Shown: one piece after another, positions 2,179 to 63,908 of the stretch | Numbering within the stretch: the stretch's first letter is position 1 | How the letters are laid out: the number at the start of each line of letters is the position of its first letter | Assembly: GCA_002269645.1 (NCBI GenBank) | Contig: NIVC01002072.1 | Coordinates: forward strand, 12,733-76,732 | Direction of reading: 5' to 3' | Length of the DNA stretch: 64,000 bases | From: Macrostomum lignano | Lineage: Eukaryota | Translations under genes and position numbers: made by a program | Notes under the pieces: model-generated | What the model saw: only the letters and a program-made list of their open reading frames with translations | The model's database searches: none | Told to the model about the DNA's origin: nothing

Positions 2179-2765
<587 letters not shown>

Positions 2766-14766: not shown

Positions 14767-16131
14767 ATGAGAATTGCCCGCAATGCTTTTTCCTACAGCG
14801 CATTTAGCCACATATGGCAGATTTTGTATGCACTGCCTCCCAATTCTTGGTAAGTTTTAATAAAGGGTTTACCCGATCAAAACGCTTCGATAGTAACAGC
14901 TTATCAAATGCATATTTTCTCGAAGATTTTCAATATTACGAGCTAATTCATGCATATGCCATATCGCTTTGTCCCCTACATGTAAATCTCTGTAAACTAC
15001 ATGTAAATCTCTGTAAAATACATGTAAATCTCTGTAAACTACATGTAAATCTCTGTAAACTACATGTAAATCTCTGTAAACGACATGTAAATCTCTGTAA
15101 ACTACATGTAAATCTCTGTAAACTACATGTAAATCTCTGTAAACTACATGTAAATCTCTGTAAACTACATGTAAATCTCTGTAAACTACATGTAAATCTC
15201 TGTAAACGACATGTAAATCTCTGTAAACTACATGTAAATCTCTGTAAACTACATGTAAATCTCTGTAAAATACATGTAAATCTCTGTAAACTACATGTAA
15301 ATCTCTGTAAACTACATGTAAATCTCTGTAAACTACATGTAAATCTCTGTAAACGACATGTAAATCTCTGTAAACTACATGTAAATCTCTGTAAACTACA
15401 TGTAAATCTCTGTAAAATACATGTAAATCTCTGTAAACTACATGTAAATCTCTGTAAACTACATGTAAATCTCTGTAAACTACATGTAAATCTCTGTAAA
15501 CGACATGTAAATTTCTGTAAACTAGATGTAAATTTCTGCAAACTAACATGTAAATCTCTGTAAACTACATGTAAATTTCTGTAAACTACATGTAAATCTC
15601 TGTAAACTACATGTAAATCTCTGTAAACTACATGTAAATCTCTGTAAACTACATGTAAATCTCTGTAAACTACATGTAAATTTCTGTAAACTACATGTAA
15701 ATCTCTGTAAACTACATGTAAATCTCTGTAAACTACATGTAAATCTCTGTAAACTACATGTAAATCTCTGTAAACGACATGTAAATTTCTGTAAACTAGA
15801 TGTAAATTTCTGCAAACTAACATGTAAATCTCTGTAAACTACATGTAAATTTCTGTAAACTACATGTAAATCTCTGCAGGCTACATGTAAATCTCTTTAA
15901 ACTACATGTAAATCTCTGTAAACTATACATGTAAATCTCTTTAAACTACATGTAAATCTCTGTAAACTACATGTAAATTTCTGTAAACTACATGTAAATC
16001 TCTTTAAACTACATGTAAATCTCTGTAAACTACATGTAAATTTCTGTAAACTACATGTAAATCTCTGTAAACTACATGTAAAAGCAGTGCGGGCAAATCT
16101 CAGCGGGCAAATCTCGATGGGCAATTCTCAT
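14767..16131. mobile_element. Non-autonomous TIR element (MITE-like) enclosing the 21-bp array
   Basis: ATGAGAATTGCCC (14767-14779) and GGGCAATTCTCAT (16119-16131) form a perfect 13-bp inverted repeat; subterminal GGGCAAATCTC repeats at right. No TSD identified. Confidence 0.6.
14977..16081 (+). repeat. 21-bp minisatellite (CATGTAAATCTCTGTAAACTA), about 52 copies
   Basis: Direct repeats with a palindromic TACATGTA core. Confidence 0.98.
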
Positions 16132-22642: not shown

Positions 22643-22844
22643 CTGCACAGTTGGGTAAGTGGGGCGAATACCAACTGTTAATGAAATGCTATTTTGCACT
22701 AGACGAATCTAGTTCTCTTTAAACTGTCTTATCCAAAAAATAAGTTTGAAAATGAACTAATGCATAGGATTCTTGCAGAGTAAGCAATTAAGTCCTATCT
22801 CTGAAATTATTATCAAGCTATCAAGTACTAACCAACTTTTAATT

Positions 22845-34300: not shown

Positions 34301-37300
34301 ACTAGTTCATCAATTGTTTCTGAACTTTCTGAACTTTATGAATTCTGAGCTTACACATCGAGTGACACATCTATGAGCACATTGAGTGAAATATCTATGA
34401 GCACATTGAGTGACACATCTATGAGCACATTGAGTGGCACATCTATGAGCACATTGAGTGAAATATCTATGAGCACATTGAGTGAAATATCTATGAGCAC
34501 ATTGAGTGAAATATCTATGAGCACATTAAGTGACACATCTATAAGCACATTAAGTGACACATCTATGAGCACATTGAGTGACACATCTATGAGCACATTG
34601 AGTGACACATCTATGAGCACATTGAGTGACACATCTATGAGCACATTGAGTGACACATCTATGAGCACATTGAGTGACACATCTATGAGCACATTGAGTG
34701 ACACATCTATGAGCACATTAAGTGACACATCTATGAGCACATTAAGTGATACATCTATGAGCACATTGAGTGACACATCTATGAGCACATTAAGTGACAC
34801 ATCTATGAGCACATTAAGTGACATATATGAGCACATTAAGTGACACATCTATGAGCACATTGAGTGACACATCTATGAGCACATTGAGTGACACATCTAT
34901 GAGCACATTGAGTGACACATCTATGAGCACATTAAGTGAAACATCTATGAGCACATTGAGTGATACATCTATGAGCACATTGAGTGACACATCTATGAGC
35001 ACATTAAGTGACACATCTATGAGCACATTAAGTGACATATATGAGCACATTAAGTGACACATCTATGAGCACATTGAGTGACACATCTATGAGCACATTG
35101 AGTGACACATCTATGAGCACATTAAGTGACACATCTATGAGCACACTGAGTGACACATCTATGAGCACATTAAGTGACACATCTATGAGCACATTGAGTG
35201 ACACATCTATGAGCACACTGAGTGACACATCTATGAGCACATTAAGTGACACATCTATGAGCACATTGAGTGAAATATCTATGAGCACATTAAGTGACAC
35301 ATCTATGAGCACATTGAGTGACCAATCTATGAGCACATTGAGTGAAATATCTATGAGCACATTAAGTGACACATCTATGAGCACATTGAGTGACCCATCC
35401 TCAACGGTTAGTAAGCTGCTAAATGGGCAAGCTGAGCTGAGCGGGAGTTGTCACAGTCTCGGCACAAACCAAAACTTTCACCCCCAATCTGTGCAGCTTG
35501 ACTACCAGCCCGAGCTGCAAAACGAGTCGCTGTGGAACGACCTCGACGACGCGGAGCCTGACTCCGACTCCAGTCTTGACGACGACGACGAGCTCAGCGT
35601 ACAATCGACGCCCAAGCCGAGCCTGCGGCGCTACTTTGGCTCGCAGGCTTCCGACTGCGGCAAGCCGCTGGCTTCAACTGCTGCTGCACCTGGGCTAAAG
35701 CAGCACCAGCAGCAGCATCGCCGGTTGCTTGCTGACGAACCCGACACGATGGATGACCCACCAGCGACGGGTCAGTCGTTGTTGCAGCCTCCAGCGCCGC
35801 TACCGCCGTCGCAGCCGACTCTTTCGCCGACGCCGCTGATGTCGACAACGTCATCACAACAGGCGCCGTCGGTGACGGCCCGCGGCTCTGCTCTGCTACC
35901 GTTCGACAATCCGCTGACAGATGTAAGTTTTGCGTTTGCGAGCTAGGGTCATTGCACAGGCGTAGCCAGTGCGGCATGGCGCCCCTTGATGCTGGCGCCC
36001 CTTGGTGCTGGCGCCCCTTGGTGCTGGCGCCCCTTGGTGCTGGCGCCCCTTGGTGCTGGCGCCCCTTGGTGCTGGCGCCCCTTGGTGCTGGCGCCCCTTG
36101 GTGCTGGCGCCCCTTGGTGCTGGCGCCCCTTGGTGCTGGCGCCCCTTGGTGCTGGCGCCCCTTGGTGCTGGCGCCCCTTGGTGCTGGCGCCCCTTGGTGC
36201 TGGCGCCCCTTGGTGCTGGCGCCCCTTGGTGCTGGCGCCCCTTGGTGCTGGCGCCCCTTGGTGCTGGCGCCCCTTGGTGCTGGCGCCCTTTGGTGCTGGC
36301 GCCCCTTGGTGCTGGCGCCCCTTGGTGCTGGCGCCCTTTGGTGCTGGCGCCCCTTGGTGCTGGCGCCCCTTGGTGCTGGCGCCCTTTGGTGCTGGGGCCC
36401 CTTGGTGCTGGCGCCCTTTGGTGCTGGCGCCCTTTGGTGCTGGCGCCCCTTGGTGCTGGCGCCCTTTGGTGCTGGGGCCCCTTGGTGCTGGCGCCCCTTG
36501 GTGCTGGCGCCCTTTGGTGCTGGGGCCCCTTCATAAAAAATTCGGTCACCCCCCCCAAAAAAAATACTGGCTACGCTATGCCTATGTATTTTAGCTCAAA
36601 GTTATAAGTCTGTGTCTATTTCTGTTAAGTCATCGAACCATATTAGCAATCGATCGTTTCTGCTTGTACAATATATTTTTTAGTTCAGCTAATGCCATTT
36701 TATCTCGTTTTCAAATTCTAACGAATTAGCAGTGCTGTCCTCAACAGATATGTTCAGTATCGTAGACTACAACTAGAGACACTAGAGACGAAGAGTACAA
36801 AGCATAGTCACTTTTACTACTGCTACAAATGGTGCTTACTCGGTTAAAAAAGTGTCCCTAGAAATTTCCAATCCAGAATCAAAGCGCATCCTGACACAGT
36901 TTAGATTAGGACCGAGGACTGCGAGACCAAAGATCCCTAACGAGAATAGGACTAACCGAAAGTGCCGCCTGGGGGGGGGGGTAGAAAGTGAAGTTCACTT
37001 CCTGTTTATTATTTATCAGAGACAGGGGGCTGTGTGCACCCTGGTGCACTTTTAGCGACATTGTCACAACTGGCAAGAGGCATTGCTGCCCATTCTGCCG
37101 ACTCCGCTGAGCAGGCACACACTCACACAGGAGTGTACAGCGGCCCTGACTGTATTTATCGTCAGGCATGTACACTTCACTGTGCCTTGGGGTTTGGCCC
37201 CCAAGGCCGTTGATTGCACGAGCAGAGCCAAGCCGAGATTCCAATTTAGCCCCAAACTAATGTGACTGCACTTGGAATCGAGCCTGGGCCGCTGGCACAT

Positions 37301-40300
37301 CAGAGCGCCGCGATGGACCACTAGGCTACGGCCCTCACTTCCTGTTTAAGTGCAGTTGGACTTTTATAGTGCTCCCCGTGATAAATCTTGGATAAACAGG
37401 TTTGCCCCAGAAAATGTTGCATTGGTCTCCGTTTTTTAAAAAGTACATGCCGTACTTCGTCCACAGGCGCCGCCGCCGCCGCCGCCGCCGCAACATTTGG
37501 CACAACAGCAGCCGAGGCGGCTGTCTTGCATCACCCCAACTGCCGCCTTCGCTGCCGTTAGTTTGCCCAATTGCCCGTCCCGTGTAAATTTTAGAATCAC
37601 AACAATTTTTATCGCTAATTGGATTTTTCAAAGAGAAAGAAGATTAGTTCTTTAAATTTTATGTCGCCGTTGAATTGTTTTTAGACTTTTTGATGATTGC
37701 GTTAATTGCATAGTCTGATTTTAGATTTCACTGAAAAAATTAGCAAACACTTATGGGATCGTTTCAGGAGCTCAAAACTTCACACCGTCCAAAGGCACAA
37801 CCTTTCATAGCCTCGAATCTTCACCTGTCCGAATCTTCACCTGCTCGAATCTTCACAGGCTCTAATCTTCACCTGCTCGAATCTTCACCTGCTCGAATCT
37901 TCACAGGCTCGAATCTTCACCTGCTCGAATCTTCACCTGCTCGAATCTTCACAGGCTCGAATCTTTACCTGCTCGAATATTCACCTGCTCGAATCTTCAC
38001 AGGCTCGAATCTTCACCTGCTCGAATCTTCACCTGCTCGAATCTTCACATGCTCGAATCTTCACCTGCTCGAATCTTCACAGGCTCTAATCTTCACCTGC
38101 TCGAATCTTCACCTGCTCGAATCTTCACAGGCTCAAATCTTCACCTGCTCGAATCTTCACCTGCTCGAATCTTCACCTGCTCGAATCTTCACCTGCTCGA
38201 ATCTTCACAGGCTCGAATCTTTACCTGCTCGAATCTTCACAGGCTCGAATCTTTACCTGCTCGAATCTTCACCTGCTCGAATCTTCACAGGCTCGAATCT
38301 TCACAGGCTCGAATCTTCACCTGCTCGAATCTTCACCTGCTCGAATCTTCACAGGTTCGAATCTTCACAGGCTCGTATCTTCACGTGCTCGAATCTTCAC
38401 CTGCTCGAATCTTCACAGGCTCGAATCTTTACCTGCTCGAATCTTCACCTGCTCGAATCTTCACAGGCTCGAATCTTCACAGGCTCGAATCTTCACCTGC
38501 TCGAATCTTCACCTGCTCGAATCTTCACAGGTTCGAATCTTCACAGGCTCGTATCTTCACGTGCTCGAATCTTCACCTGCTCGAATCTTCACCTGCTCGA
38601 ATCTTCACCTGCTCAAATCTTCACCTGCTCAAATTAAAAGCTTACCACCCCGAAAAAGTCTCGCTTTATGTAGTCAGTTCCGCTAGTTGCCAATTTGAAC
38701 AAAATTAAATTCTTATGAAGTTTCGATCTTATGAAATTCACTGTCTTCGACAATGTGAAATTTCTAGCTTGTTAAAGCACCCAAATTGCCAGAGGTATGA
38801 ATTTTCACTGGCAATTTAATGCTATTGTGGATCGGAAAACAGAAGCAATTCAAGACAAAAAATCTCTCCGATGCATCTAATTTTAGGACTTGAAAATACA
38901 ACAAAAAATTAAAAATTCAAACAATTAACTTCGGGTAATAAAATTGTTTACAGATCTAATTTAGTAAGATCATAAATTCTAACCGTTCCTACTGATGGTC
39001 TGAGAAAGTTTTTTATGATTGCAAATAATTAATCAATTAATCAAGGTGTTTTTACTTTAATAAGATAGGTAATCTGCAAGATTTGATTGCTGTATTAATA
39101 ATTGACTTTCTGCGTACTTTTTCCTAAATTTTAATAACTTATTTTACTGGAATGCATTGTGTCTCAGTGTGCAAGCTTTAGCCAATAAGTACACGGGGCT
39201 CTTTTCTAAACTTCTTTTTTGTCTTTTTAGCCGCGCAAGGAGTGCATCGAGGCCGTCCACCGTCTCCACGGCGAACCGCTGCCCGAGAGGCTCTGCATTG
39301 TCTGCACCGCTGAGGCTGGCGGCCGGGTGAGTGCCTCACTCACCTCACCTGAAATCAACCGTCACCTGTTCACACACTTTACCTGACACCAATCCTCACC
39401 TATTCACCCACCTCATCTGACACCAATCCTCACCTGTTCACCCACCTCATCTGACACCAATCCTCACCTGTTCACCCACCTCACCTGACACCAATCCTCA
39501 CCTGTTCACCCACCTCACCTGACACCAATCCTCACCTGTTCACCCACCTCACCTGACACCAATCCTCACCTGTTCACCCACCTCACCTGACACCAACCCT
39601 CACCTATTCACCTACGTCACCTGACACCCCGACTCAATGAATCCCAAGTTCATTTGCCTCCCTCGACACCCACAAGGCGCTATTGGAAGCGCTGCAGTCG
39701 GAGATGAGGCTGCCCTGCGTGCCTACGGCCTCCCCGGCCGACTGCAGGCACGCCATCGGTCACATGGCTGCTGCGCTGGCGCAGACGCCGAATCCAGCCG
39801 GCCGAGCCGGGGCGCCGCCGCCACCGGCGCTGCACAGAATCTGCCTTCTCGGCTCCGATCAGCACGCCAACGCTGTGCTCCGCGCCTACGTGGATCATTT
39901 CGGCTCCCGACCGCCTGGCTGGCAGTCCCGAGTTCGATTCCACTACGCCCCGTTGCCAGGCGGGCCGACCGCCTGTGCCCAGCTGTGCCGGCACCTTGCC
40001 GGCTGCGACCCCACCTACGCCAAGCTGTTCCACGCAGACGATTGGCGGGACAGCTCGCCTAGCGAGGCGGCGCGTCGGATCTGGCGCTACCTGACTGGCG
40101 CCTCGGGCTTGCTGGGCCTACCAATTGGCGAGGTCATGCTGGCCACCGGCCTGCGCCACGCCGAGTCCTCTGAAGCCTCTGAAACGGCGGCCCAACAGCA
40201 GCAGCAGCAGCAGCAACAGGTGCCTGGTTCCGCTTCATCCGCCTCAGCAGCGACGTCCGGGTCTGCGGTAACTGCGACGGCGACTGCGGCGTCGGGCTCG

Positions 40301-41950
40301 GCGGTAGCATCTTCGACGGACGGGTCTGCGGGAGTCGGCGGTGTCGCTGTCGGTGCCGCGGCATCCGGCTCGATGGACGACACCGACGTAGTGGGGTTCG
40401 CCTCCTGCCCGTTGGGCGCGCAGACTTTCGTGCCGTTCGTTGTTGGGGTTCGCATCGGCCTGGCGGAACATCCGGACAGCGACGGAGAGCAGCAGCACCA
40501 CCAGCTGCACCATCATCACCATCCGCATCATCACCAGACCTCTCCAGCCGCTGGCCACCTTCACGGCTCCGGCACTCCGCCGCAGAGCCCCAATTTGAAC
40601 GACGGCGGCGGCGGCGGCGGTAGCGGCGGCGGCGAGTTTGTGGACCTCCAGTTGGACTACTGGACTGCGGGCAACGAGCGCAAGACCGCTCTTAAGCCGG
40701 CCTTCCGGGCGTTGTACATCAGTCGGCTGGCGCAGCCAGCTGCTGCGGATGACAAAACCTCTGCCTCTGGAGGCCCCAGCGGTGGCGCCGGAGCGGGTGG
40801 CTCGGTCAGCGCTAGAGGCCTCGTCATGACTGTGGTCAATCGGGAGAAAAAACAGAAAAGTGAGCCCTGACTTATCGCCGCTTCATAGGGTAATCAGCTG
40901 GAGTAACTAAGGCTGCATCGGCGCGGCTGATTCGCGCCTCGTCCCCTGATTCGATTTCGTGCGCGGCCGCATTCGTTTGGGACTTGTGCAGGAAAAATTG
41001 GCCGGGGGATTGCTGACGATTGGAATGTCACCCTTTGCGTGTGTATGAGTGCGTGTCTGCATACAGTATTGGCGCGCTTGTATGTGCTTAAGACAGGAGT
41101 CAGCGGAATTTTCCAGAGATACTTAAAAGCTGCTGACTGTACGAGTAGTATTTTGTGCAAAAGTAAACAGCTGGAGCAACTATGACTTTAACTGTGTACT
41201 AAAATGCCTCGTCATGTAATTAATTTGCAGTAATGCGCCTCGGCAAGAAAGGCAAGGAGACCGAGGGTAAACGCGAAGTTGTAGAAAATCTATCTAGGCT
41301 AATTTGCACTAGCAAGAGCCAGAGTCATCCCATGAAAGGTAAGACAGAAGTCTCATATGTTAATGAAACCTTTTTCCTATTGCTGTGTCGTTAGGACTGT
41401 CTTAGTAATTTTTGTTCAGTTCATGTGCACTCGTCTTCTCTTTACTCTTTTTTCTCTGCCTCGTCCTCTCTGTCCAGTTCAGTCTTGTTATTCTTATCTC
41501 TCTCCCTAGCTGCCTTCTGATTGGCTGGCTCTTTAATCTCGTCTCTTTCCCCAGTCGCGCATTCCTACCCCTGCAGGGTGGGCCAATAGACACAGCGGGG
41601 AGACAAGGCTCGCCTTTTCTGCTACACGTCTACCCCTCCTTTTCTTATCTGCACTCAACCCCAACCCCCCCCCCCTAATTTAATGTCTTATCTATACAAC
41701 TCGTTTGGGCCCTGAGCCCGCGCAACTTACTAGTACTGTTTTATTACCAATTCCAACTAATACAAATATATAATTCAACGGTTGTCTATTCTTCTCTAAC
41801 ACGCTGAAACCAATTCCAGTTGTGGTGGACGGCGTCGACTGGTCTGGTGTGAAATTTTTCCAACTGTCATCGCAGTGGCAAACCAACGTTAAACAGATGC
41901 CAATTGCCGTGTTTCAGGCTGGCAAAACTGCTTCGGCTATGGGCCTTTAA
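25359..41950 (+). CDS. PACS: Phosphofurin acidic cluster sorting protein (PACS1/2 ortholog)
   Basis: Exons 25359-25447, 28399-28675, 29718-30068, 31115-31210, 35497-35922, 37467-37556, 39231-39326, 39677-40859, 41231-41338, 41820-41950; all GT-AG and phase-consistent. Matches to the PACS family: FWESEKSSPCIIPR, QYPHAIKR..LLIMLQRRKKY, acidic middle region with STPKP, LVMTVVNREK, LSRLICTSK, DGVDWSGVKFFQLSSQW. The small exons 31115-31210 and 37467-37556 are less certain. Confidence 0.93.
26309..26723. mobile_element. MITE with perfect 21-bp TIRs
   Basis: GGACTTCTTCAGGTTTAGGTT ... AACCTAAACCTGAAGAAGTCC. Confidence 0.7.
27854..28036. mobile_element. Tc1/mariner-type MITE
   Basis: TACGAGGGTTGTCCCAAAAATAG versus CTATTTCTGGGACAGCCCCTATA: imperfect 23-bp TIR with TA flanks. 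Confidence 0.65.
28728..29577 (+). repeat. 37-bp minisatellite (CAAATATCCCCAGACGAGTCTGTTAGTCAAATGGACT) in PACS intron 2
   Basis: About 22 copies. Confidence 0.97.
30097..31051 (+). repeat. 20-bp minisatellite (GTCAGTTACACCTGGTGTGT) in PACS intron 3
   Basis: About 47 copies with a palindromic ACACCTGGTGT core. Confidence 0.98.
31935..33702 (+). repeat. 35-bp minisatellite (GACACTACAAGCGACATCTTAATCGAACATTTATC) in PACS intron 4
   Basis: About 48 copies, some with an internal GCGACGCTACAA duplication. Confidence 0.97.
33810..33884. mobile_element. Possible miniature TTAA-flanked TIR element (Kolobok-like AGG...CCT ends)
   Basis: GATAATTAATTAA|AGGCAG ... CTGCCCT|TTAATTAATTATC. Confidence 0.35.
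34355..35394 (+). repeat. 24-bp minisatellite (GAGCACATTGAGTGACACATCTAT) in PACS intron 4
   Basis: About 42 copies. Confidence 0.97.
35957..36580. mobile_element. MITE (GCGTAGCCAG...CTGGCTACGC TIRs) filled with a 16-bp array (GCTGGCGCCCCTTGGT, about 34 copies) in PACS intron 5
   Basis: TIRs at 35960-35969 and 36567-36576; array at 35978-36530. Confidence 0.75.
36860..37218 (+). mobile_element. Decayed 3' end of a non-LTR retrotransposon (ORF2 C-terminal zinc-knuckle-like region plus 3' stem-loops)
   Basis: Translates to KRILTQFRLG...PNENRTNRKCRLGGGVESEVHFLF, resembling the R..LTxFRxG...R.C..C...VEDExHFLFxC tail of CR1/L2-related LINE ORF2. Confidence 0.6.
37812..38631 (+). repeat. 16-bp minisatellite (CTCGAATCTTCACCTG / ...CACAGG) in PACS intron 6
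   Basis: About 50 copies. Confidence 0.97.
39337..39627 (+). repeat. 34-bp minisatellite (CTCACCTGACACCAATCCTCACCTGTTCACCCAC) in PACS intron 7
   Basis: About 8 copies. Confidence 0.93.
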
Positions 41951-44368: not shown

Positions 44369-45615
44369 ATGTCTGCTATCGCGAGCCACTGCGGCTGTGC
44401 GCTGCGTCGTCTCCTGTTTCTAGCGCCGCTTGCTTCGGCGACAGCGGCGGCTTATCCCGCTGCCTCCGTCTGCCAGCGGCGCGGCTACCCGGGCGGCGTC
44501 AAGAAGGTGCCGGATTTGGAGGATCATCCGAAACGGCGCAAGGGCCGTCACGTTCACCCGATTCCCAACAGCCAATACCGCGGCTTCACTGTTAACGAGG
44601 GCTCCAGGGTAAAACCTTTTTTGGGGCCGATTTGTTTTACCTTGAAGTCTTCTTTGGAATCTTTTGCTCCTCGCTATGGTCCCCTCAGCTGAAACTTATC
44701 ACGGTCCCTCAGCTGCACCTCATTATGATTCCTCAGCTGCACCTCATCATGGTCCCTCAGCTGCACCTCATCATGGTCCCTCAGCTGCACCTTATTCTGA
44801 TCCCTCAGCTGCACGTCAACATGATCCCTCAGCTGCACCTCATCATGATCCCTCAGCTGCACCTCATCATGATCCCTTAGCTGCACCTCATCATGGTCCC
44901 TCAGCTGCACCTTATTCTGATCCCTCAGCTGCACCTCATTATGATTCCTCAGCTGCACCTCATCATGGTCCCTCCCTCAGCTGCACCTTATTCTGATCCC
45001 TCAGCTGCACCTCATTATGATTCCTCAGCTGCACCTCATCATGGTCCCTCAGCTGCACCTCATCATGGTCCCTCAGCTGCACCTTATTCTGATCCCTCAG
45101 CTGCACCTCATCATGGTCCCTCAGCTGCACCTCATCATGATACCTCAGCTACACCTCAGCATGATCCCTCAGCTGCACCTCAGCATGATCCCTCAGCTGC
45201 ACCAAATCATGATCCTTCAGCTGCACCTCATCATAGTCCCTCAGCTGCACCTCATCATGATCCCTCAGGTGCACCCACCTCATCATGGTCCCTCGGCCGA
45301 ACCGCATAGTACCTAGCTTCCCCTCAACTCACCGCTCCACCACGCCAGGTGCGAACAAACGACGTCGTGTTGCGCCAAATCGGGCTTCAATTTTATCCTG
45401 GCGAGAATGTACGCTTGAACAGGGACAACTGGGACCTCGTGGCCGAGTCCAACGGCCGTCTGTTGCTGACCACCGAGCTGCTGGATCCGCTGCCGGACAG
45501 TCCGCTCTACGAGCTTGTGAAATCTGGCCAGGCATTTGAAAAAGTTTTTGTGCACGTGGTACGCATGCCGGAAGACGAGCTCAAGGCCGAGTACCAACTG
45601 GTGTCGCTTGTCTGA
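44369..45615 (+). CDS. MRPL27: Mitochondrial ribosomal protein bL27m, divergent, 168 aa
   Basis: Exons 44369-44608 and 45349-45615 (phase 0, GT-AG). Arg-rich presequence. RGFTVNEGSRVRTNDVVLRQIGLQFYPGENV aligns with the L27 G.K..EG..V..GNII..QR..R.HPG..V core; C-terminal KVFVHVV matches metazoan MRPL27 KTFVHVV. Confidence 0.8.
44681..45292 (+). repeat. 24-bp minisatellite (CCTCAGCTGCACCTCATCATGATC) in the MRPL27 intron
   Basis: About 25 copies. Confidence 0.96.
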
Positions 45616-52528: not shown

Positions 52529-54211
<1,683 letters not shown>

Positions 54212-55310: not shown

Positions 55311-56820
55311 AGGTCGGGAGAGTGCTGGCCTGAAGAATAGAAAGTACAGTCAGGGCCGCACTGGTGCGCTTGTCTGTTTTCAGGAGTCAGCGATATGGGT
55401 AGAATTGCATGCCCCAGCTAGCGCTGGAATTGTGTGACGATGTCACCGCCGAAGGCGTTGCTCCGCCAAGGTGCCCGCAACCCTCCTGCAATTGATACAA
55501 TTAATAACGGTCTGTATGTGCAGGACCGTTAATGTTACAGGTTCTGACTGACACCTCCCCCCTTCTGTAGTTGTTGTTAAACGATTGGGTCCGTAAAAAT
55601 TGTAAAAAAACCCGAAGAAAAAGGCAAAACGCTGCAGTTTATCGAATATGGATAGATTTTTTCGGTGTCACACAGTTTATTCTTTTAGTGTCATTTAGTA
55701 GAAACTATGTAGTTTAGTAGTATCATACTAGTAAAAATATAGCTTGATTCTGTATAGAAAATATAGCGATATAAGAATCGATTGAGAGAAAAAATGTTGG
55801 AGAAAAAGCAAAAAAAATAAAGTTTTCGATTTTGACAGCAGTTTCGCTTATAAAGAGATGCTTTGATTTTTTTGTTTAAATGTATTATAATTTTGTCGGG
55901 AAACATAATTGTCACATTAAAAAAACATTGGGAATTTTTATAGCTCAACGTTTATCTACTTATAGTAGTAAGATTCTAGAAAGATAACTTAATCGCACTG
56001 GCAAGGTCAGGATTTTGTGTTATTTGTTTACTGATAAAACAAACTACTCAGCATTTTATTGGGTGATATTATTCAATAATATCCCGTAAATTTTTATGTA
56101 TGATTTATGAGATAAAACGTGCCCTTTTCGGGAGCTATTTTCATAAATTGTATAATTTTATACAAATATCCCCCTCAAAAGGTGTGTTTTATCTTCCACT
56201 AGTACATAATTTACTTCGAAGTACAATCAAACTTATCACAATCAATTAGTTTCTTTTACTTTCGACCGAATTTTTTCGATGTCGAAACTCGATTTCTCGC
56301 TAAACTTGTTGAGTGCTGCAACTCGGGAAAAGCGCAAAACAAAAAAGAAACAAAATATTAGAAATTTCAAGATAAAAAACTGAAAACTTCCTACCTCCTA
56401 ATTTAGGTTCACATGAAATCTGCATATAATATTGAAATCAAAATCTCCAGAGCTATACTGCTGTACGACTGCTGAGATTCTACATGACCCGATGAAAACG
56501 GCACCCCAGGCCAAGAAGCGTCCCCAGAGTCGCTTGCATCCCGCCCGGTCGAGTTGTTGCAGGTAACACAGGTAAAATACGAGAGAAAAGTGTACTGACG
56601 ACTGTAACACGAGATGTCACGGTAAAAGTCGCCTAAAGAGTCACTATAAGGCGTTTGATTGTCTAAGACTATTAAACTCTAATTGGCCTGCTTGAGTTAG
56701 TAGAGAGTTAAGCGCTAACGCAACGACTCTTCCGTGTCTCGAATCTAGAATACAAAACGATCACGTGACGCGCGTTTTGTACTCCACACTCGCCTCTTCC
56801 GTTGCATTTGAGTCTTTAAA

Positions 56821-57045
56821 ATTTACAAGGCAAACTCTGGCCCGTGGGCCGGCCCGCAAAGCTTCTCTATCAGGCCTCACGGATCAGGTCCTTCGAAACT
56901 TTACAATATAGCCATCCCGCCCGCTCAATTGGAATTTACCTTCTTAACTCATTTTTGTTTTTTCTCTCCCCTCCTCTGGCCCGCGGTCATGCATGCGCTT
57001 AGGTTCTCTTTTGGCCCTTGAGCTAATAGAGTTTGCCAACCCCTG
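56821..57045. mobile_element. hAT-Charlie-like (MER58-type) MITE with a degenerate left end
   Basis: GGCAAACTCTGGCCCGTGGGCCGGCCCGC at left; TTTGGCCC...AGTTTGCCAACCCCTG at right. Confidence 0.65.
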
Positions 57046-57119
57046 TGCTAAAGTCATAAGAGAGTTGTTTGCAATGAGTTCTTTGCGAATAAAGTCATGT
57101 TAACGTTTTCAGCCGGTGC

Positions 57120-60100
57120 TCACGGTGTACAGAAGGAGCTAGCCACAATAGATATTTCTACCTTCCCATCAGATTCGGTGTTGCCTCCATCCGATCCTGA
57201 AACTTGCTTAGCTGAAGCAGCTGCATAGCTGGAGCCGCCGCCACCTGGATTGTCTTGCGCCCCGCCGGAGCCGCCGCAGTAGCCACCGCCGCCGCCGCCG
57301 CCTCCGGCCTTATTGCCTCCCATTGTTCGGCCTCCACCGCCTCCACCACCGTAGCCACCAAAGCCGCCGTCGCCCGATGCGCCATCACCTCCTGCAAAGT
57401 TACTTCCAACTGAGCCACAATTATTGCCACTGGGTGAAGTTCCAGATGATTGCCATCCGGCACCGCCGGCGCCACAGTTGCCTCCGGATGGGTTGCTTCC
57501 CGCGTTTCCGGAGCAGCCGCCGGTCGAACTGGTTCCAGGGCTGCCTGTAGCCGAACTGACGTCTGCTCCACCGCCTCCTCCTCCGGCCGCCAGCAGCAGG
57601 ACGGGACTGCCGCCACTCGTGTAGACGAAAGTGCCGCCTCCGCCGCCGCCGCCATCGCCATTGTTTCCGGATTTTCCGACAACAATAGTCAACGTCTGAG
57701 AGCTGTTCAGGACAAAGTGGGCAATTTTTATAGCCCCGTTTCCACCAGCTGCGCTTCCGGAACCTCCTTTGGCGCCACGCGCTTCGAACCGATAGCAGGC
57801 ATTGTCCACAGGGGGCGTGTAGTTCACCGGTGTTCCATATTGTTTTGAACCCGAGGTTGGCACTGAAAATTGAAATTGACGATTCGAAATTTTATGCAAT
57901 AAATATAAATTCATTGGACAACAAAATTATATGGACGCTGCACTAAAAAATACATGTACTGTAGTCTCCTGTGCAGCATTTTCAGAGAAAATGCAGCTTG
58001 ATAAACTTGATAAACTTGATAAACAGACCCTTGATTCATTTGAAATTCGAAATTTCAATTTCAATATGTATAGGAAATTTCTAGCTAAAAATCCTAAAAA
58101 CTGAAGATTGAAAGTACGATGTTTGAGTCTTTGAAATATGCAAATGGCTTCATGAGCTCTGCGGGCGCGCCTGTCTCCCCTGCTGGCGGATGTCACATCC
58201 AAGAGGAGCCACAAGTTAAGCTGCCTGTCCTTTGTCCAGCTCTGGAAATCTCTTTTTTAATTTAGCTTTAACTAAGAGCAATTTTGTTGCGGGTGATTGA
58301 ATGATTCTCTATGGACGCGCTCAGAACCAGTGGTTTAAAAACATTTCATTATGGAAAAGCTTAAGCCGTATGACTGCGAGACCAACCTTAAGCTTTTTCT
58401 GTCAGTATTTCCAGCTGAAGGCTCGGTTTAAATATAAACTTTACTTCTTAACAGTAGAAAGACCACGCCATTTTTCCCCATGGGGAAAAACCACGGGGTG
58501 TATTACAAATACACACGACCCATTTCACGATAGCTCGCAAACCGATTTTCGTAGAAGTCCACCACATGGATCAAAATTTTCCGCCCTTTCCGACGAACTA
58601 ACTTTCAAAGTCATCCGACGTCAGCATCGTCGAGATATTCAACGATTCTTGTCGAAGACACTGGTGGCAAGGCCAACCAACACTACACTGTATAAACCTT
58701 TATGGTGAATCCATATTGGCTCAATAATTTGGGTCCATCTGTCGTAGAGGCCTTTTTTCTCAGCATCCCAGGCACCGGGTCCCCTTCATCACCGTCTGGA
58801 GCATCGGTGGCGACCGTCGGGACCTTCAACAAAAGCACCGATCGGCATCTCAGAGACGGCTGCGTTCCCAAAACTGAAGTGGAAGAATCCTCTTCTGCAT
58901 GAAGCATTCAGTCAGTAGACATAATCTGTGAATGAAATGGACGATGGCGACCCTCTAGGCTGACCTGTAGACATACAGGCGACCTTCAGGAGCTTCAACG
59001 GAGTGCCACCACGCGGCCCTGACGAGCGGGCACCCCCAACATCGTGGTTTTTCTATCAAGGCACCAAACCAGGCATGTCTGCATATTATACAATGCTTTT
59101 GCACCATGTTAAATTTGAGAGTTTTGGGAACGCAGCGGTCTCTGAGATGCCGATCGGTGCTTTTGTTGAAGGTCCCGACGGTCGCCGCCGATGCTCCAGA
59201 CGGCGATAAGAGGACTCTGTGTGGTGGGATGCTGAGAGCAAAAGTTCCTGCGACTGATAACCAAAGTTTGTTGAGCCGACGTGGTTTCACGATGAGATTT
59301 TGTGAGCAGAAACATTTTGCCAATGTTGTGTAGAGTGTTTTACTTCCCACAAAAGATCACAAAATTGTTAATGTAGAGGTTTATTCATAGAATGCTACTT
59401 TAAGTAGACTAATGCAAAAATGCGCAGCGAAACTTAAACCGTGAGTCAAGTTACTATTTTATCGAAAACCATGAAGCATGTTACTATTTTTTACGAACAA
59501 TGAATCACCTTACTATTTATAGCACAAAAAGAATCATGTTGCTATTTATAACGCAAAGAAGAGTCATGTTACTATTTATTACCAAAAAAGATGAATCATG
59601 CTGCTATTTATATACGTCGCAAAGGTTGCCTATAAATACAAGTGGTCCGAAGCGAAGCGGACCCGGAGCCAACAACCGAACCTCCAGAAGGAGAAGCTCC
59701 GAAGAGGAAGCCTTAGGAGGACTTCCTGCAGACCAAGTCAACCGAGACTCGGCTGAGTTCTTGCGGAAAGCCTTACTCATTTGCGCCCGTTGTTTGAGTC
59801 GACTCATTATTGTGGTTGTGCTTGAGTCTGTTGAGACTCTTGAGTCTATTTGAGACTCCATTGGTTGTAGTCTCCAGAAGGACTACCCTGATAGATCTCA
59901 GACTATCAGTGAATACCGGAGCTATACCTAGGGTGCATTAAGACACGCTAGAGGGAGGAGGCTTATTTGAAACCGCATTAAGGCGCAGGGATCCCCATTG
60001 ATAACACGAAGCTTCTGATTGCTCCAAACGACAGATACCGGCCGGAAACGACTTCAGTGGAAGTAAAGGAACGCGGACCTAGTTTACGAAACATAGACGT

Positions 60101-61236
60101 CTAACGAGCCAAGAAGTTCGAGAACTGCAAAACAAGAAAGAGCTCTCCAAGACAGGACTCAAGGTAAGAGATATCTTCATTTGATTACTGGGTTGCCTAG
60201 CAGTAGCTAGAAGTGATTGTTCTTTGATTAGTCTTGGTAGTAAGGAACACATCAGTTGGTGATTTTTGCCACCAGACACCCGAGGAGAATCGTTGAATAT
60301 CTCCCAACGATGCCGATTTTTAGTGATTCCCAAAGTTGCTTCATCGAACAGAAGGGAAAATTTTAGCCCGTGTTCTGGATTTTCATGGCAATTGGTTGTT
60401 GAATATTTTTGGAGATCCAGACAAAGGAAAAATGTGTGTATTTGAAATACACCCCCATGGACTTTCTACTGTTAATAATTCCGTATGCTAAGATTCTTTT
60501 TATGCCTACCTGTTACTACCATTGGAGCAGGAGTTGTAGTGGTTGTCGTAGTGGTCGTAGTCGGAGTCGTGGTGGTTGTCGTAGGCGGAGTTGTCGTCGT
60601 CGTAGTCGGAGTCGTAGTGGTCGTAGTCGGAGTTGTAGTGGTCGTAGTCGGAGTTGTAGTGGTCGTAGTCGGAATTGTAGTGGTCGTAGTCGGAGTCGTA
60701 GTGGTTGTCGTAGGCGGAGTTGTTGTCGTCGTACTCGGAGTCGTAGTGGTCGTAGTCGGAGTCGTAGTGGTCGTAGTCGGAGTTGTAGTGGTCGTAGTCG
60801 GAGTTGTAGTGGTCGTAGTCGGAGTCGTTGTGGTCGTAGTCGCAGTCGGAGTCGAGGTAGTCGAAGTCGGGGTCGTCAGAATTGAAGTCGTAGTCGGAGT
60901 CACTGACGCAGTCTCACAGTCTGCTGCGCCTCGCAGCACCTGCGTGTTGCAGGCCGGTCCGCCGCTGAGTTGCCAGAAAAGCAGCAGGTCGCAGCTGTTT
61001 CCAAGAATGCACGACCTGTTGCTAGGCGAGTACTCATACACTGAGCACAGAGTCGTGTTGCTCACGCATTTGACAGCACACTCTAGAGGATCGGGAACGC
61101 CAAGCAGTTTGCGCGGACCGTCAGCTGCAGTGCTAGCATTGTGACACAAGTCCGGCCTCTTGTCGAAGACAAAAGATGTACCGTCGGCGAATGAAATCAG
61201 CACTGCCAAGGTTATGGCAGCTTCGTGAAGTGTCAT
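57120..61236 (-). CDS. Secreted protein (about 489 aa): signal peptide, PAN/apple-like domain, Thr/Pro mucin stalk, ALK/LTK-like glycine-rich domain
   Basis: Exon 1 61236-60510 (ATG; hydrophobic LHEAAITLAVLISFADG; ECAVKCVSNTTLCSVYEYSPSNRSCIL; (PTTTTTT)n) ends ACA G|gtaggc (phase 1). Exon 2 57862-57120 begins ttttcag|TG (phase 1) and encodes YRFEARGAKGG, QTLTIVVGKSG, GGGGGGGTFVY, LLLAAGGGGG, GGFGGYGGGGG, GGGGGGGYCGG, GGGGSSY, DGKVEI. Each exon is well supported; the join is inferred from matching phase. Confidence 0.78.
58704..59292. repeat. Inverted repeat with an 84-bp near-perfect inner arm and diverged outer arms
   Basis: 58792-58875 versus the reverse complement of 59120-59203 match at 82/84; spacer 244 bp. 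Outer arms are about two-thirds identical. Confidence 0.93.
59443..59640 (+). promoter_or_regulatory. Six degenerate 30-bp units with TGA(G/A)TCA and CTATTTAT motifs, followed by TATAAATA (LTR-like promoter module)
   Basis: Units directly visible; AP-1-like and MEF2-like motifs (perfect CTATTTATAG at about 59513-59522); TATA box at about 59631. Confidence 0.5.
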
Positions 61237-61416: not shown

Positions 61417-62086
61417 CATCCCACGACAGTAGCTAATTAGCTTCGGGATGGAGAGAGAAACTTTGCCCGTCATGCGGCAGCTGAGAGTAAATTGGTGGCA
61501 TTGAGCATTCTCAATGGGATGGGAAGTTGCGGGATGCTGCGGCCAAACGGGACTCCCTCTGCATCAGTAATCAACTCATTCTGCCTCAAGCCGATTTTGG
61601 GCGAACAAAGGGATTTTTTAAACTTTTTTTACTCTGGTAGCTATAGTCAACGCTTTTAATGAGCTTAGTATCTACATTGCTGCTGAGTAGCTTTGGCAGT
61701 TGTGGCAAGCTCAAAATAGCTTTGTGCTGGCTTGTCTTGAGCCTCGACAAGAGGTGTCTGGATCCGTTTTTAATCTCTATTCAATCTTGATTTCAAATTT
61801 TTCGATAAAAGTCGAAAATAAAAGTCGAATATAAAAGTCTGGTCACTTTTTTGGCTTGTTTCCAGAAATAAAATGTCGGTTTCGCCTCAAGATTGTTTTA
61901 TGAATTAAGTTTTCATGGAGGAGGAGGTGCGGGGCTCGTGTGGCGTTGACAGAAAGTGCGTGTGTAAGCTAAGGGTGCATTCTATGAGTGGAAAGATGCC
62001 AAAGAAGAAGAGTATGAAGTTTTGTTTTTTGCTGCTTATGTTTTGAAGTTGCAGGTACAGGTTTACAGGTAATGCATACATGCAGA

Positions 62087-62390
62087 GGGGTTGTAGCCCA
62101 GTGGTTAGAGCGTCGGACTCATGTCTTGAAGGTCAGGGGTTCGATTCCCGATCCCCCTGGAACAATTTATGTCCTTGAGCAAGACACTTAACTCTGCGTT
62201 GCTTCAGTTCACCCAGCTGTAAAATGGGTGCCAGCATTAGCTGGGGTAATTAAAGGTGTGCGTGGCGACTCCCCAGTCATTGAACTGAACAGCCGTACGC
62301 AGCCTTCAGATGCGCCTTGCAATAGCTGCGGCTGAGCTGTCGTTGCACATCTGCCCATTAGGACAGGAGTAATCAATTATTATATTATTA
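62087..62390 (+). mobile_element. tRNA-derived CORE-SINE (MIR-like central domain)
   Basis: A box TAGCCCAGTGG, B box GGTTCGATTCC. TGTCCTTGAGCAAGACACTTAAC...CTTCAGTTCACCCAGCTGTAAAATGGG resembles the MIR CORE. (ATT)n tail; second copy at 22845-23153. Confidence 0.88.
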
Positions 62391-62951
62391 CATGGAAAAT
62401 TTTGTCCTATCTTTATAGTGTTTTTCAAGGATTTATCCTTATTATCCTTATAGTGCCACAACCCCTACATTCAGCCCTACCATCGGCTTCATCTTTTACA
62501 GTAAAACTTTCTAGCATTTTATTCGATCGAAAACAGTTAATTATAACTATTTGTAATGTGAATAAATTTGTGCTACAAATGCCAAACGTTTCCAAGCTGA
62601 GAAAATTTGAATGAATCTAATTTTTTGTTATAAAATAGCCACACTCCAGGCTTGGCCCCGCACTATAGGGACAAACGAGAGGCTCCTGATGGTAGCTCTT
62701 CTCCTATTTAGTTAGAAGAGAACCAGACTCCGTCTGGAGCAGCCTTTCATGCTGTCGTCCACTCCAACTCTCTCGCTGTTTCATTTGCCGTTTAAATTAT
62801 TTACGACATCGCATAGCCAGGACTGCATGGTTGGCTCACGCTTGCTTCCAGTTAAAACCGGCTTTAACGAACTCTTTTTTAACTGCCTGAGAAAACCTGG
62901 CAAAGTGTGGATGGCTGCTCGGAGCCTGCGCTGTATCAAGCTGATTCGAGA

Positions 62952-63908
62952 AGAGAGGTGAGAGAAGAGAGGTGAAGAGAGGGGAGAAGAGGAGAGGTAA
63001 GGGGAGAAGAGAGGTGAAGAGAGGAGAAGAGAGGGGAGAAGAGGAGAGGTAAGGGGAGAAAAGAGGTGAGGAGAGGAGAGGAGAGGAGAGGTGAAGAGAG
63101 GAGAGGAGAGGGGAGGAGAGTGGAGAAGAGGAGAGGAGAGGAGAAGAGAGGTGAAGAGAGGAGAGGAGAGGGAGGAGAGGAGAGGTAAGGGGAGAAAAGA
63201 GGTGAGGAGAGGAGAGGAGAGGAGAAATGAAGAGAGGAGAGGAGAGAGAGGTGAAGAGAGGAGAGAAGAGGAGAGGAGAGGGGAGAAGAGGAGAAGAGAG
63301 ATAGGGAGAGGAGAGGTAAGGAGAGGAGAGGAGAGGGGAGAAGAGGAGAGGAGAGGAGAGGAGAAGAGAGATGTGGAGAGAGAGAGGGAGAGAGAGAAGA
63401 GAGGTGAGGAGAGGAGAAGAGAGGTGAAGAGAGGAGAGATGAAGAGAGGAGAGGAGAAGAGAGGTGAGGAGAGGAGAGGTGAGGAGAGGAGAGGTGAGGA
63501 GAGGAGAGGAAGGGGAGGAGAAGAGGAGAAGAGAGATAGGGAGAGGAGAGGATAAGGAGAGGTGAGGGGAGAAGAGAGGTGAGGAGAGGAGAAGAGAGTG
63601 AGGAGAGGAGAGGGGAGGAGAAGAGAGGTGAGGAGAGGAGAGGAGAGTGAGGAGAAGAGAGGTGAGGAGAGGAGAGAGAGGGGAGGAGAAGAGAGGTGAG
63701 GGGGAGAGGGTGGAGAGAGGAGAGGAGAGGAGAGGAGAGAGAGATGTGGAGAGGAGAGGTGAGGGAGAAGAGAGGTGAGGAGAGGAGAAGAGAGGTGAGG
63801 AGAGGAGAGGGGAGGAGAAGAGAGGTGAGGAGAGGAGAAGAGAGGTGAGGAGAGGAGAGGTGAGGAGAGGAGAGGAGAGGGAGGAGAAGAGAGGTAAGAG
63901 AGGAGAGG
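62952..63908 (+). repeat. About 950-bp polypurine low-complexity tract (GAGAG/GAGGA/GGTGA)
   Basis: Directly visible; no C seen and T is rare. Confidence 0.97.

What the first reader, a model, noticed from the sequence alone, without database searches (positions are those of the whole stretch)
57120..61236. Kinase-less secreted protein fusing a PAN domain and mucin stalk to an ALK/LTK glycine-rich domain
Seen: two ORFs listed separately in the track join through phase-matched GT-AG sites into one protein of about 489 aa with no TM segment; there is no room for kinase exons before the ATP5PB 3' end. Established: this Gly-rich fold (polyglycine-II bundle) is the ligand-binding ectodomain of ALK/LTK receptors (ALKAL ligands; fly Alk binds Jeb), and PAN/apple domains mediate protein or glycan binding. 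Inference: a soluble decoy or co-receptor for ALK-type ligands, or a mucus/adhesive component. I do not recognise this architecture from characterised proteins.
Basis: partly seen in the sequence, partly recalled or inferred. Interest (0 to 1): 0.8.

Follow-up and report, generated by a model that had tools for sequence, protein, structure and literature searches.

The report
Secreted flatworm PAN–mucin–glycine-rich-domain protein
This is a real two-exon flatworm (Macrostomum) gene for a secreted glycoprotein that joins a PAN/apple module, a threonine-rich mucin stalk and a kinase-less copy of the domain that ALK receptors use to bind ligand; it is one of a small Macrostomum gene family and more likely a matrix or mucus binder than an ALK-ligand decoy.

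Summary
On the minus strand, exon 1 (61236-60510) and exon 2 (57862-57120) join through CAG|GTAGGC...TTTTCAG|TG in phase 1. The product is 489 aa: signal peptide, PAN-like module, a 129-aa stretch that is 75% Thr, and a 247-aa Gly-rich domain, followed by a stop. There is no TM segment or kinase anywhere in the window.

Three Macrostomum lignano relatives support the model. Two transcript-annotated paralogs have a phase-1 intron at the same place. A third gene model crosses the identical junction.

The C-terminal domain belongs to the ALK/LTK GRD family. The family profile matches ALK at E=1.7e-46. The AlphaFold model (pLDDT 87) has ALK, LTK or SCD-2 as its top 21 Foldseek PDB hits.

The ALK-decoy interpretation is not supported. 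The domain is the short form common in prokaryotic surface proteins. It lacks the ALK-specific N-terminal segment, the ~30-aa insert and the EGF-like module. Human ALK ranks 250th of 254 in distance from it.

The same PAN+GRD architecture is already in UniProt for M. lignano, auto-named "Apple domain-containing protein", "Loricrin" and even "receptor protein-tyrosine kinase". None of these is characterised.

Best reading: a two-ended extracellular binder in matrix, mucus or gland secretion. Function is inferred. Interest is moderate.

The parts
60510..61236 (-). Exon 1: start codon (61236-61234), signal peptide, PAN-like module, Thr/Pro mucin stalk. Ends in phase 1 at CAG|GT.
   Evidence: The N-terminus aligns from Met1 with M. 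lignano paralogs.
61180..61236 (-). Signal peptide, aa 1-19 (MTLHEAAITLAVLISFADG|TS).
   Evidence: It is the only hydrophobic segment in the protein. Paralogs have equivalent leaders. No dedicated signal-peptide predictor was available.
60916..61164 (-). PAN/apple-like module, aa ~25-107, with 8 Cys and 3 N-glycosylation sequons.
   Evidence: Pfam PAN_1 scores 23.7 bits on the isolated N-terminus (cut-off 21.4) and 20.2 on the full protein. The paralog profile's top PDB hit is the plasminogen PAN domain, E=0.0079. C53, C57, C64, C76 and C96 are invariant across paralogs.
60510..60900 (-). Mucin-type PTS stalk, aa 113-241: 75% Thr, 16% Pro, about 15 copies of a 21-nt (7-aa, TTTTTPT) repeat.
   Evidence: TRF finds period 21 with 15.2 copies and period 129 with 2.2 copies; both periods are multiples of 3. 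Composition.
57863..60509 (-). Intron of 2647 nt, GT...AG, phase 1. It contains an 88-nt inverted-repeat pair (58788-58875 / 59120-59207) and 29/58-nt tandem repeats.
   Evidence: Intron position and phase are conserved in paralogs.
57120..57862 (-). Exon 2: complete TNF-like/glycine-rich (GRD/TG, PF12810-type) domain, aa 243-489, and the TGA stop (57122-57120).
53816..54211 (+). Convergent neighbour: last coding exon of mitochondrial ATP synthase subunit b (ATP5PB). It bounds the locus on the 3' side.
   Evidence: PF05405 E=9.9e-17. Hits found with the upstream exon also carry PF05405.

Best explanation
Shown: a two-exon Macrostomum gene encodes a 489-aa secreted protein with no membrane anchor and no kinase. 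In order it has a signal peptide, one PAN/apple-type disulfide module, a ~130-residue Thr/Pro mucin stalk, and one C-terminal TNF-like/glycine-rich domain of the PF12810 (ALK/LTK GRD) family. It belongs to a multigene PAN-GRD family with at least five loci or models in M. lignano. Three of these carry the mucin insert: the window gene, P0001 and P0130.

Inferred mechanism: the protein is an extracellular two-ended binder. The stalk, presumably heavily O-glycosylated, would be stiff, hydrated and protease-resistant. It would hold a PAN module (glycan or protein binding) away from a rigid GRD module that binds a second partner. The protein could then cross-link or tether components of a surface matrix, mucus or gland secretion. 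This is how the PAN-mucin-ZP protein LET-653 uses its two end domains in nematode apical matrix.

It is not a derivative of the ALK receptor and probably has nothing to do with ALK signalling.
For: Gene model. Secreted, with no TM, GPI-like tail or kinase. The C-terminal stop is conserved in paralogs.

GRD identity: the profile of the window domain plus 87 homologs hits ALK at E=1.7e-46, LTK at 3e-41 and SCD-2 at 2e-22 over the whole domain. 39 of the 88 aligned sequences reach PF12810. The AF2 model has pLDDT 87 and pTM 0.88. Its top 21 Foldseek PDB hits are all LTK, ALK or SCD-2, with E about 1e-10 for ALK/LTK and TM about 0.7.

PAN. Mucin.

Family: P0002, P0124, P0136, P0001 and P0130 are all from M. 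lignano. The PAN-type N-terminus was found only in these among the 262 relatives fetched.

Not ALK-like.

Functional analogy: the PAN and ZP ends of LET-653 bind different matrix compartments and are joined by a mucin-like linker (PMC4970718). Prokaryotic relatives pair the GRD with surface-display or adhesion modules: PEP-CTERM, fn3, Ig-like, F5/8 type C, Listeria-Bacteroides repeats.
Against: There are no expression, localisation or binding data. No partner is known for any non-ALK GRD, so the 'second binding end' is assumed. The PAN call is marginal: the AF2 model of the N-terminus is poor (pLDDT 54) and its Foldseek matches are not significant. The window protein itself gets no direct PF12810 hit from hmmscan. 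No canonical poly(A) signal lies within 620 nt of the stop. Transcription of this particular copy is not shown.
Confidence: 0.5

Rival explanations
1. Soluble decoy or co-receptor for ALK-type ligands. The free GRD would sequester a Jeb/HEN-1-like or ALKAL-like ligand and so modulate ALK signalling.
For: The domain is a true homolog of the ALK/LTK ligand-binding TG domain. It is secreted and lacks a kinase, as a decoy would be.
Against: Pairwise similarity to ALK is weak (24 bits) compared with 60-107 bits to prokaryote and metagenome GRDs. Searching human ALK GRD against the fetched set gives prokaryotic proteins at 45-104 bits; of the Macrostomum proteins only the P0130 fragment appears, at rank 162 of 178. 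ALK is 250th of 254 in distance from the window domain, and was never sister to the Macrostomum group in 100 bootstraps of a crude NJ tree. The domain lacks the ALK N-terminal FTxCGxxGxxGPT segment, the ~30-aa insert and the EGF-like module. ALKALs are vertebrate-only, and the known invertebrate ligands are LDLa proteins (PMC10605310). Several divergent paralogs (46-52% identity) fit poorly with a single conserved ligand.
Confidence: 0.06
2. A secreted recognition or effector protein of a fast-evolving class: either an immune lectin-like pattern-recognition molecule or a reproductive (seminal-fluid or eggshell) protein. PAN and/or GRD would bind non-self or partner-derived ligands rather than building matrix.
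For: It is a genus-restricted, multi-copy, rapidly diverging secreted family (46-52% identity between paralogs). Mucin repeat length differs between copies (window ~129 aa, P0001 ~40 aa). The TNF-like beta-sandwich and PAN folds are common in recognition proteins (general knowledge).
Against: No expression or localisation data exist in either direction. Nothing in the sequence separates this reading from a structural matrix role. No literature on these genes was found.
Confidence: 0.25
3. The two ORFs are not one gene: they are separate genes, a pseudogene remnant, or chance ORFs in repeat-rich DNA.
For: There is no direct transcript evidence for this copy. The intron is long (2.6 kb) and carries repeats. 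No canonical poly(A) signal was found.
Against: Intron position and phase are conserved in two annotated paralogs, and a third model crosses the identical junction. Both exons are intact and open. Exon 2 alone would start without a signal peptide. The repeat periods of 21 and 129 nt preserve the reading frame.
Confidence: 0.04

Closest known systems
Macrostomum lignano 'Apple domain-containing proteins': PAA57358.1 (Mlig028980g1), PAA61162.1/PAA91998.1 (Mlig019850g1/g2), A0A1I8IMG2, A0A1I8GWL7 ('Loricrin'), A0A1I8J935 ('receptor protein-tyrosine kinase')
   Same: They share the signal peptide - PAN-like module - GRD order and have the GRD on one terminal exon behind a phase-1 intron. All have a Cys at the start of the GRD and a Cys 1-3 residues before the stop. 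A0A1I8GWL7 is 93% identical to the window over 98 aa of the GRD and 28 aa at the end of the PAN module, and crosses the same junction.
   Different: Mlig028980, Mlig019850 and A0A1I8IMG2 have no mucin stalk and are only 46-52% identical in the GRD. A0A1I8GWL7 and A0A1I8J935 are frameshifted or fragmentary models. The exact 489-aa product is not in the 15-billion-protein collection. None is characterised, and the names are automatic.
Prokaryotic and metagenomic 'glycine-rich proteins' of Pfam PF12810, e.g. WP_162038014.1 (Chengkuizengella sediminis), a B. thuringiensis plasmid protein (P0092), and PEP-CTERM/T9SS/fn3-linked forms
   Same: These are the closest relatives outside Macrostomum (E 1e-12 to 1e-25). 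Many are of the same short type, which begins directly at the 'xYxIxAxGAxGG' strand. All core motifs are shared, and the proteins are extracellular or surface-located.
   Different: They have no PAN module or mucin stalk and no spliceosomal introns. Some of the longer ones carry several GRD copies (up to 7 matched stretches) with bacterial sorting or adhesion modules. Their function is also unknown.
TG (TNF-like + glycine-rich) ligand-binding supradomain of ALK, LTK and C. elegans SCD-2 (PDB 7NX1, 7LRZ, 7NWZ, 7LIR)
   Same: Same fold and family: profile E=1.7e-46, Foldseek E about 1e-10, TM about 0.7, 23-29% identity to ALK/LTK (18-19% to SCD-2).
   Different: The window protein has no TM helix, kinase, EGF-like, MAM or LDLa module. 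It lacks the N-terminal strand segment and the ~30-aa insert. Direct pairwise score is only 24 bits. No specific phylogenetic affinity was seen.
PAN-mucin apical-matrix glycoproteins such as C. elegans LET-653 (PAN-PAN-mucin-ZP)
   Same: Secreted, with N-terminal PAN, an O-glycosylated Ser/Thr-rich linker and a distinct C-terminal binding module. In LET-653 the two ends bind different matrix partners (PMC4970718).
   Different: The C-terminal module is a ZP domain, not a GRD. No homology outside the PAN module is claimed; this is an analogy of design only.

Membership tests
PF12810 ALK_LTK_GRD / TG domain family | Direct Pfam HMM hit at or above the gathering score (24.5 bits) on this protein | tested here: not met
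   hmmscan gives no PF12810 hit for the full protein or for exon 2, probably because of composition filters. Paralog P0124 reaches 23.0 bits, just below the cut-off. 39 of the 88 sequences in alignment A1 do reach PF12810 at E<=0.01.
PF12810 ALK_LTK_GRD / TG domain family | Full-length profile homology to solved GRDs | tested here: met
   The A1 profile against PDB sequences gives ALK 1.7e-46, LTK 3.2e-41 and SCD-2 2.2e-22, colinear over the whole domain. The single sequence against ALK gives E=2.7e-4.
PF12810 ALK_LTK_GRD / TG domain family | Fold: TNF-like beta-sandwich enclosing a glycine-rich (polyglycine-II) core | tested here: met
   The AF2 model has pLDDT 87.1 and pTM 0.88. Eight strands at the two ends flank a strand- and helix-free Gly-rich middle. 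The top 21 Foldseek PDB hits are all LTK, ALK or SCD-2, with TMq 0.60-0.71. pGII helices were not measured directly.
PF12810 ALK_LTK_GRD / TG domain family | Conserved motif series (AxGAxGG, GGxGA, LxIxVG, GGGGGxFV, AAGGGGG, GAGW, GGFGGGGG, GGGGGYxGG, GGGGxS[YF], DGxVxI) | tested here: met
ALK/LTK receptor tyrosine kinases | Transmembrane helix and cytoplasmic tyrosine-kinase domain | tested here: not met
   The stop comes 10 aa after the last GRD strand. There is no TM segment, no kinase motif set in any frame of the window, and no Pfam hit in downstream minus-strand segments.
ALK/LTK receptor tyrosine kinases | Membrane-proximal EGF-like module after the GRD; ALK-type N-terminal strand segment and ~30-aa insert in the TNF-like part | tested here: not met
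   Alignment A3
ALK/LTK receptor tyrosine kinases | Binds an ALKAL or Jeb/HEN-1-type ligand | not testable with these tools
   This needs binding assays. ALKALs are absent outside vertebrates according to PMC10605310.
PAN/apple domain (PF00024) | Pfam PAN_1 at or above the gathering score (21.4 bits) | tested here: met
   Marginal: 23.7 bits (E=4.5e-5) for the isolated N-terminus and 20.2 bits for the full protein. UniProt labels the paralogs 'Apple domain-containing'.
PAN/apple domain (PF00024) | Core cysteine pattern C-x3-C-x(6-7)-C-x(11-20)-C around a helix and beta-hairpin | tested here: met
   C53, C57, C64 and C76 are invariant in four paralogs. They align with the plasminogen PAN cysteines.
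PAN/apple domain (PF00024) | PAN fold | tested here: inconclusive
   The AF2 model has pLDDT 54, though its core has a strand-helix-hairpin order. Foldseek gives nothing with E<1; only scattered weak PAN-type hits appear (SML-2, 6stx, HGF NK1).
Mucin-type PTS domain | Long tandem-repeat region dominated by Thr/Ser/Pro | tested here: met
   129 aa with T 75%, P 16%, S 3%. There are 15 copies of a 21-nt repeat. O-glycosylation itself cannot be tested here.
Macrostomum PAN-GRD family | Colinear signal peptide - PAN - GRD order, phase-1 intron just before the GRD exon, Cys pair at GRD start and C-terminus, stop right after | tested here: met

The most novel reading that the evidence does not exclude
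Macrostomum carries a free-standing, kinase-less lineage of the ALK-type TG/GRD domain that is independent of ALK. It could be a survivor of the soluble animal GRD proteins from which the ALK ectodomain was once assembled. Alternatively it could be a module captured from bacteria and then fitted by exon shuffling (phase-1 intron) behind a PAN module and a mucin stalk. Under either origin, it may act as a soluble binding protein for a ligand that has not yet been identified.
Probability: 0.15. Interest if true: 0.6.

Novelty: new variant of a known kind. Interest (0 to 1): 0.38.

Why it matters
The ALK/LTK glycine-rich domain is discussed almost only as a receptor ligand-binding module. Here an animal uses the same fold in secreted, kinase-less proteins that resemble prokaryotic surface proteins more than they resemble ALK. 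This bears on where the ALK ectodomain came from. It also offers a tractable model organism, with RNAi and transgenesis available in M. lignano, for asking what a non-receptor GRD binds.

There is a practical point too. Automatic annotation of this family is misleading: one member is named 'Loricrin', another 'receptor protein-tyrosine kinase', and two older models are fused to neighbouring genes. Pfam thresholds also miss the GRD in these proteins.

Tried and rejected
1. Word-indexed homolog search with the PAN region found nothing. The PAN analysis therefore rests on four paralogs.
2. AF2 of the N-terminus from that 4-sequence alignment was poor (pLDDT 54), and Foldseek gave no significant match.
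3. hmmscan does not call PF12810 on the window protein. Family membership had to be shown by profile and by structure.
4. I tried to pin down the species with an ATP5PB exon. Only ~55%-identical PF05405 proteins came back. The organism is therefore given as Macrostomum (lignano or a close relative) on the strength of the 93% match to A0A1I8GWL7.
5. Literature searches for Macrostomum plus glycine-rich/PAN/mucin, for PF12810, for ALK_LTK_GRD and for the Mlig/UniProt identifiers found no study of these genes or of kinase-less GRD proteins. The De Munck et al. structure paper is not held, so site-1 contact residues could not be compared.
6. A crude NJ tree of 254 GRD domains groups the Macrostomum sequences, but with only 12/100 bootstrap support. 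It is used only to show there is no ALK affinity, not to claim an origin.
7. The larger M. lignano models P0261 (787 aa) and P0262 (1892 aa, running into pyruvate-kinase-like sequence) were rejected as read-through or fusion artefacts.
8. Hydrophobic stretches in translations of the AT-rich DNA downstream of the stop were rejected as chance: the ORFs are short, have no Pfam hit and have no conserved counterpart.
Full report
**1. What is in the sequence**

The minus strand carries two ORFs exactly as reported: 60472..61236 (254 aa) and 57120..57914 (264 aa). Exon 1 runs from the ATG at 61236 to 60510 and ends ...AACAG|GTAGGC. Exon 2 starts at 57862 after ...CAATTTTCAG| and runs to the TGA at 57122-57120. 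The lengths are 727 and 743 nt, which sum to 1470 nt, or 489 codons plus stop. The intron is in phase 1.

The product has four parts:
- a signal peptide (MTLHEAAITLAVLISFADG|TS), which is the only hydrophobic segment;
- a Cys-rich module, aa ~25-107;
- a 129-aa stretch that is 75% Thr and 16% Pro;
- a 247-aa domain that is 32% Gly.

The Thr/Pro stretch is encoded by about 15 copies of a 21-nt repeat nested in a 129-nt repeat. Both periods are multiples of three.

**2. Is the splice real?**

A phase match alone would occur by chance one time in three. Comparative evidence settles it.

The best database relatives are all from the flatworm Macrostomum lignano. I mapped two NCBI models onto their genomic loci:
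- PAA61162.1 (Mlig019850, P0124) has two exons, with a phase-1 GT-AG intron 20 residues before the 'GCYRI' that opens the Gly-rich domain.
- PAA57358.1 (Mlig028980, P0002) has three exons; its last intron is also phase 1, 17 residues before 'ACYRL'.
- The window intron is phase 1, 22 residues before 'ACYRF'.

A third M. lignano model, A0A1I8GWL7 (P0001), is 93% identical to the window over 98 aa of the Gly-rich domain and 28 aa at the end of the PAN module. It reads the mucin repeat and the first 30 codons of exon 2 in the +2 frame. Even so, it crosses precisely the same junction: 'NS|ANLGFK' equals the +2 translation of AACAG|TGCCAACC.

The N-terminus aligns with the paralogs from Met1. All family members stop 1-3 residues after a conserved last Cys. 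The GTGAGC overlapping the stop codon therefore need not be a donor.

**3. Kinase-less and secreted**

ATP5PB lies on the + strand, and its last coding exon ends at 54211 (PF05405). The 2.9 kb between it and this gene's stop could physically hold small exons, so 'no room' is too strong. However, that stretch has no minus-strand open segment longer than 101 aa and no Pfam hit. A six-frame motif scan of the whole 64 kb found no HRD/DFG/GxGxxG/[ST]D[VIL]W[SA][FYL]G kinase motif set; the single 'DFGLTK' at 42573 is a chance match. There is no C-terminal hydrophobic tail that would suggest a GPI anchor.

**4. The C-terminal domain**

hmmscan does not report PF12810 for this protein, and paralog P0124 falls just short at 23.0 bits against a cut-off of 24.5. 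Membership of the family is nevertheless firm:
- 39 of the 88 sequences in alignment A1 (the window domain plus 87 homologs) hit PF12810.
- A profile of the window domain plus those 87 homologs matches the solved ALK, LTK and SCD-2 domains end to end, at E=1.7e-46, 3e-41 and 2e-22.
- An AlphaFold2 model built on that alignment is confident, with pLDDT 87 and pTM 0.88.
- The model's 21 best Foldseek matches in the PDB are all LTK, ALK or SCD-2 TG/GRD structures, with E down to 1e-10 and TM about 0.7. After them the scores collapse.

**5. It is not ALK-like within that family**

The single sequence scores 24 bits against ALK. It scores 60-107 bits against proteins from bacteria, archaea and metagenomes. 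Those proteins carry PEP-CTERM, T9SS, fn3, Ig-like, F5/8-C or Listeria-Bacteroides repeat modules.

In the reverse direction, I searched human ALK GRD against the 262 fetched proteins plus the window product. It finds prokaryotic proteins at 45-104 bits. None of the full-length Macrostomum PAN-GRD proteins appears in the list; only the fragment P0130 does, at rank 162 of 178.

In a match-state alignment of 254 domains, ALK ranks 250th in distance from the window domain. In a crude NJ analysis it was never sister to the Macrostomum group (0/100). The Macrostomum group itself has only 12/100 bootstrap support.

Alignment A3 shows the reasons. The flatworm domains are the short form: they lack the N-terminal 'FTxCGxxGxxGPT...' segment, the ALK-specific ~30-residue insert and the EGF-like module.

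ALKALs are vertebrate-only, and the invertebrate ALK ligands Jeb and HEN-1 are LDLa proteins (PMC10605310). The decoy idea therefore has no positive support.

**6. The N-terminal module**

PAN_1 scores 23.7 bits on the isolated N-terminus (cut-off 21.4) and 20.2 bits on the full protein. The four core cysteines are invariant in four paralogs. A profile of those paralogs puts the plasminogen PAN domain first in the PDB (E=0.0079), with MIC4 and factor XI apple domains among the weaker hits. Structure prediction from only four sequences was poor, and its fold search was not significant. The PAN call is probable but not proven.

**7. The family and prior knowledge**

M. lignano has at least five PAN-GRD loci or models. 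UniProt names them automatically as 'Apple domain-containing protein', 'Loricrin' and, for one kinase-less fragment, 'receptor protein-tyrosine kinase'. Two older models are fusions with neighbouring genes.

The PAN-type N-terminus was found only in Macrostomum proteins among all the relatives fetched. The mucin insert is seen only in the window gene, P0001 and P0130.

The exact 489-aa product is not in the 15-billion-protein collection. No paper in the held library mentions these genes or studies any kinase-less GRD protein.

**8. Mechanism**

Shown: a secreted protein with a PAN-like module and a GRD at opposite ends of a mucin-type stalk.

Inferred: it is a two-ended extracellular binder or cross-linker in surface matrix, mucus or a gland secretion. 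The design parallels LET-653, whose PAN and ZP ends bind different matrix compartments across a mucin-like linker (PMC4970718).

A Macrostomum-specific Cys pair (Cys265 and Cys487) probably staples the first strand to the C-terminal tail. This is inference; the coordinates were not inspected.

The rival readings are an immune or reproductive recognition protein, an ALK-ligand decoy, and 'not one gene'. They are weighed in their own sections.

**9. Verdict**

The headline interpretation (ALK decoy) is unsupported. The architecture is uncharacterised but already catalogued in one genus. Interest is moderate: it is a useful lead on the non-receptor biology and origin of the ALK-type glycine-rich domain, not a new kind of system.

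Noticed in passing
window 62085-62159 (+): ARAGORN calls a tRNA-Met (CAT) gene about 850 bp upstream of, and antisense to, the PAN-GRD gene's start. Whether it is a functional tRNA or the head of a tRNA-derived SINE was not examined.
   Followed up: no
window 62948-63908: A ~960-bp (GAGAG)n / CT-rich microsatellite of about 192 copies lies 1.7 kb upstream of the gene.
   Followed up: no
window 58788-58875 and 59120-59207 (inside the intron): An 88-nt inverted-repeat pair, 97% complementary and 244 nt apart, looks like a MITE or hairpin element. It sits next to 29/58-nt tandem repeats at 59451-59612.
   Followed up: no
window 56500-57119 (-): No AATAAA, ATTAAA or common variant lies within 620 nt downstream of the stop codon. 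The 3' end of the transcript is undefined.
   Followed up: partly
window 28367-28780 and 39683-40870 (+): These are exons of a PACS (phosphofurin acidic cluster sorting protein) gene: C2_PACS_N E=5e-19 and Pacs-1 E=3e-33. The latter exon includes poly-Gln and His-rich runs.
   Followed up: partly
window 21815-22699 (-): An ORF with a beta-1,4-galactosyltransferase-type domain (Glyco_transf_7N, E=1.7e-43).
   Followed up: partly
window 1798-2775, 3263-3904, 5364-5825, 12667-13329, 14814-15823, 30086-31054, 34351-36607, 37753-38708, 44600-45300, 53263-53737: The window is packed with long tandem minisatellite arrays that produce spurious open frames on both strands. This fits a very repeat-rich genome. 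One array lies in an ATP5PB intron.
   Followed up: no
UniProt A0A1I8J935 (P0130), A0A1I8GWL7 (P0001), P0261, P0262: The M. lignano database entries for this family are misnamed or mis-modelled. A kinase-less fragment is called 'receptor protein-tyrosine kinase'. A frameshifted model is called 'Loricrin'. Two models are fused to neighbouring genes, one of them pyruvate-kinase-like.
   Followed up: partly
Foldseek hits 22-23 for model me50e117f84c5: After the ALK/LTK/SCD-2 structures, the only other weak matches (E about 5e-3, TM <0.3) are to a chain of the mycobacteriophage Bxb1 tail tip (9d93_Q). This may only reflect glycine-rich composition.
   Followed up: no
L004 (ENA ERZ25070786 contig, gene 2708-3631): P0129 is a 307-aa long-type GRD protein on a gene-poor 13.7-kb metagenome contig, and appears to contain an unspliced intron. 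It may be another eukaryotic kinase-less GRD gene of unknown origin.
   Followed up: partly
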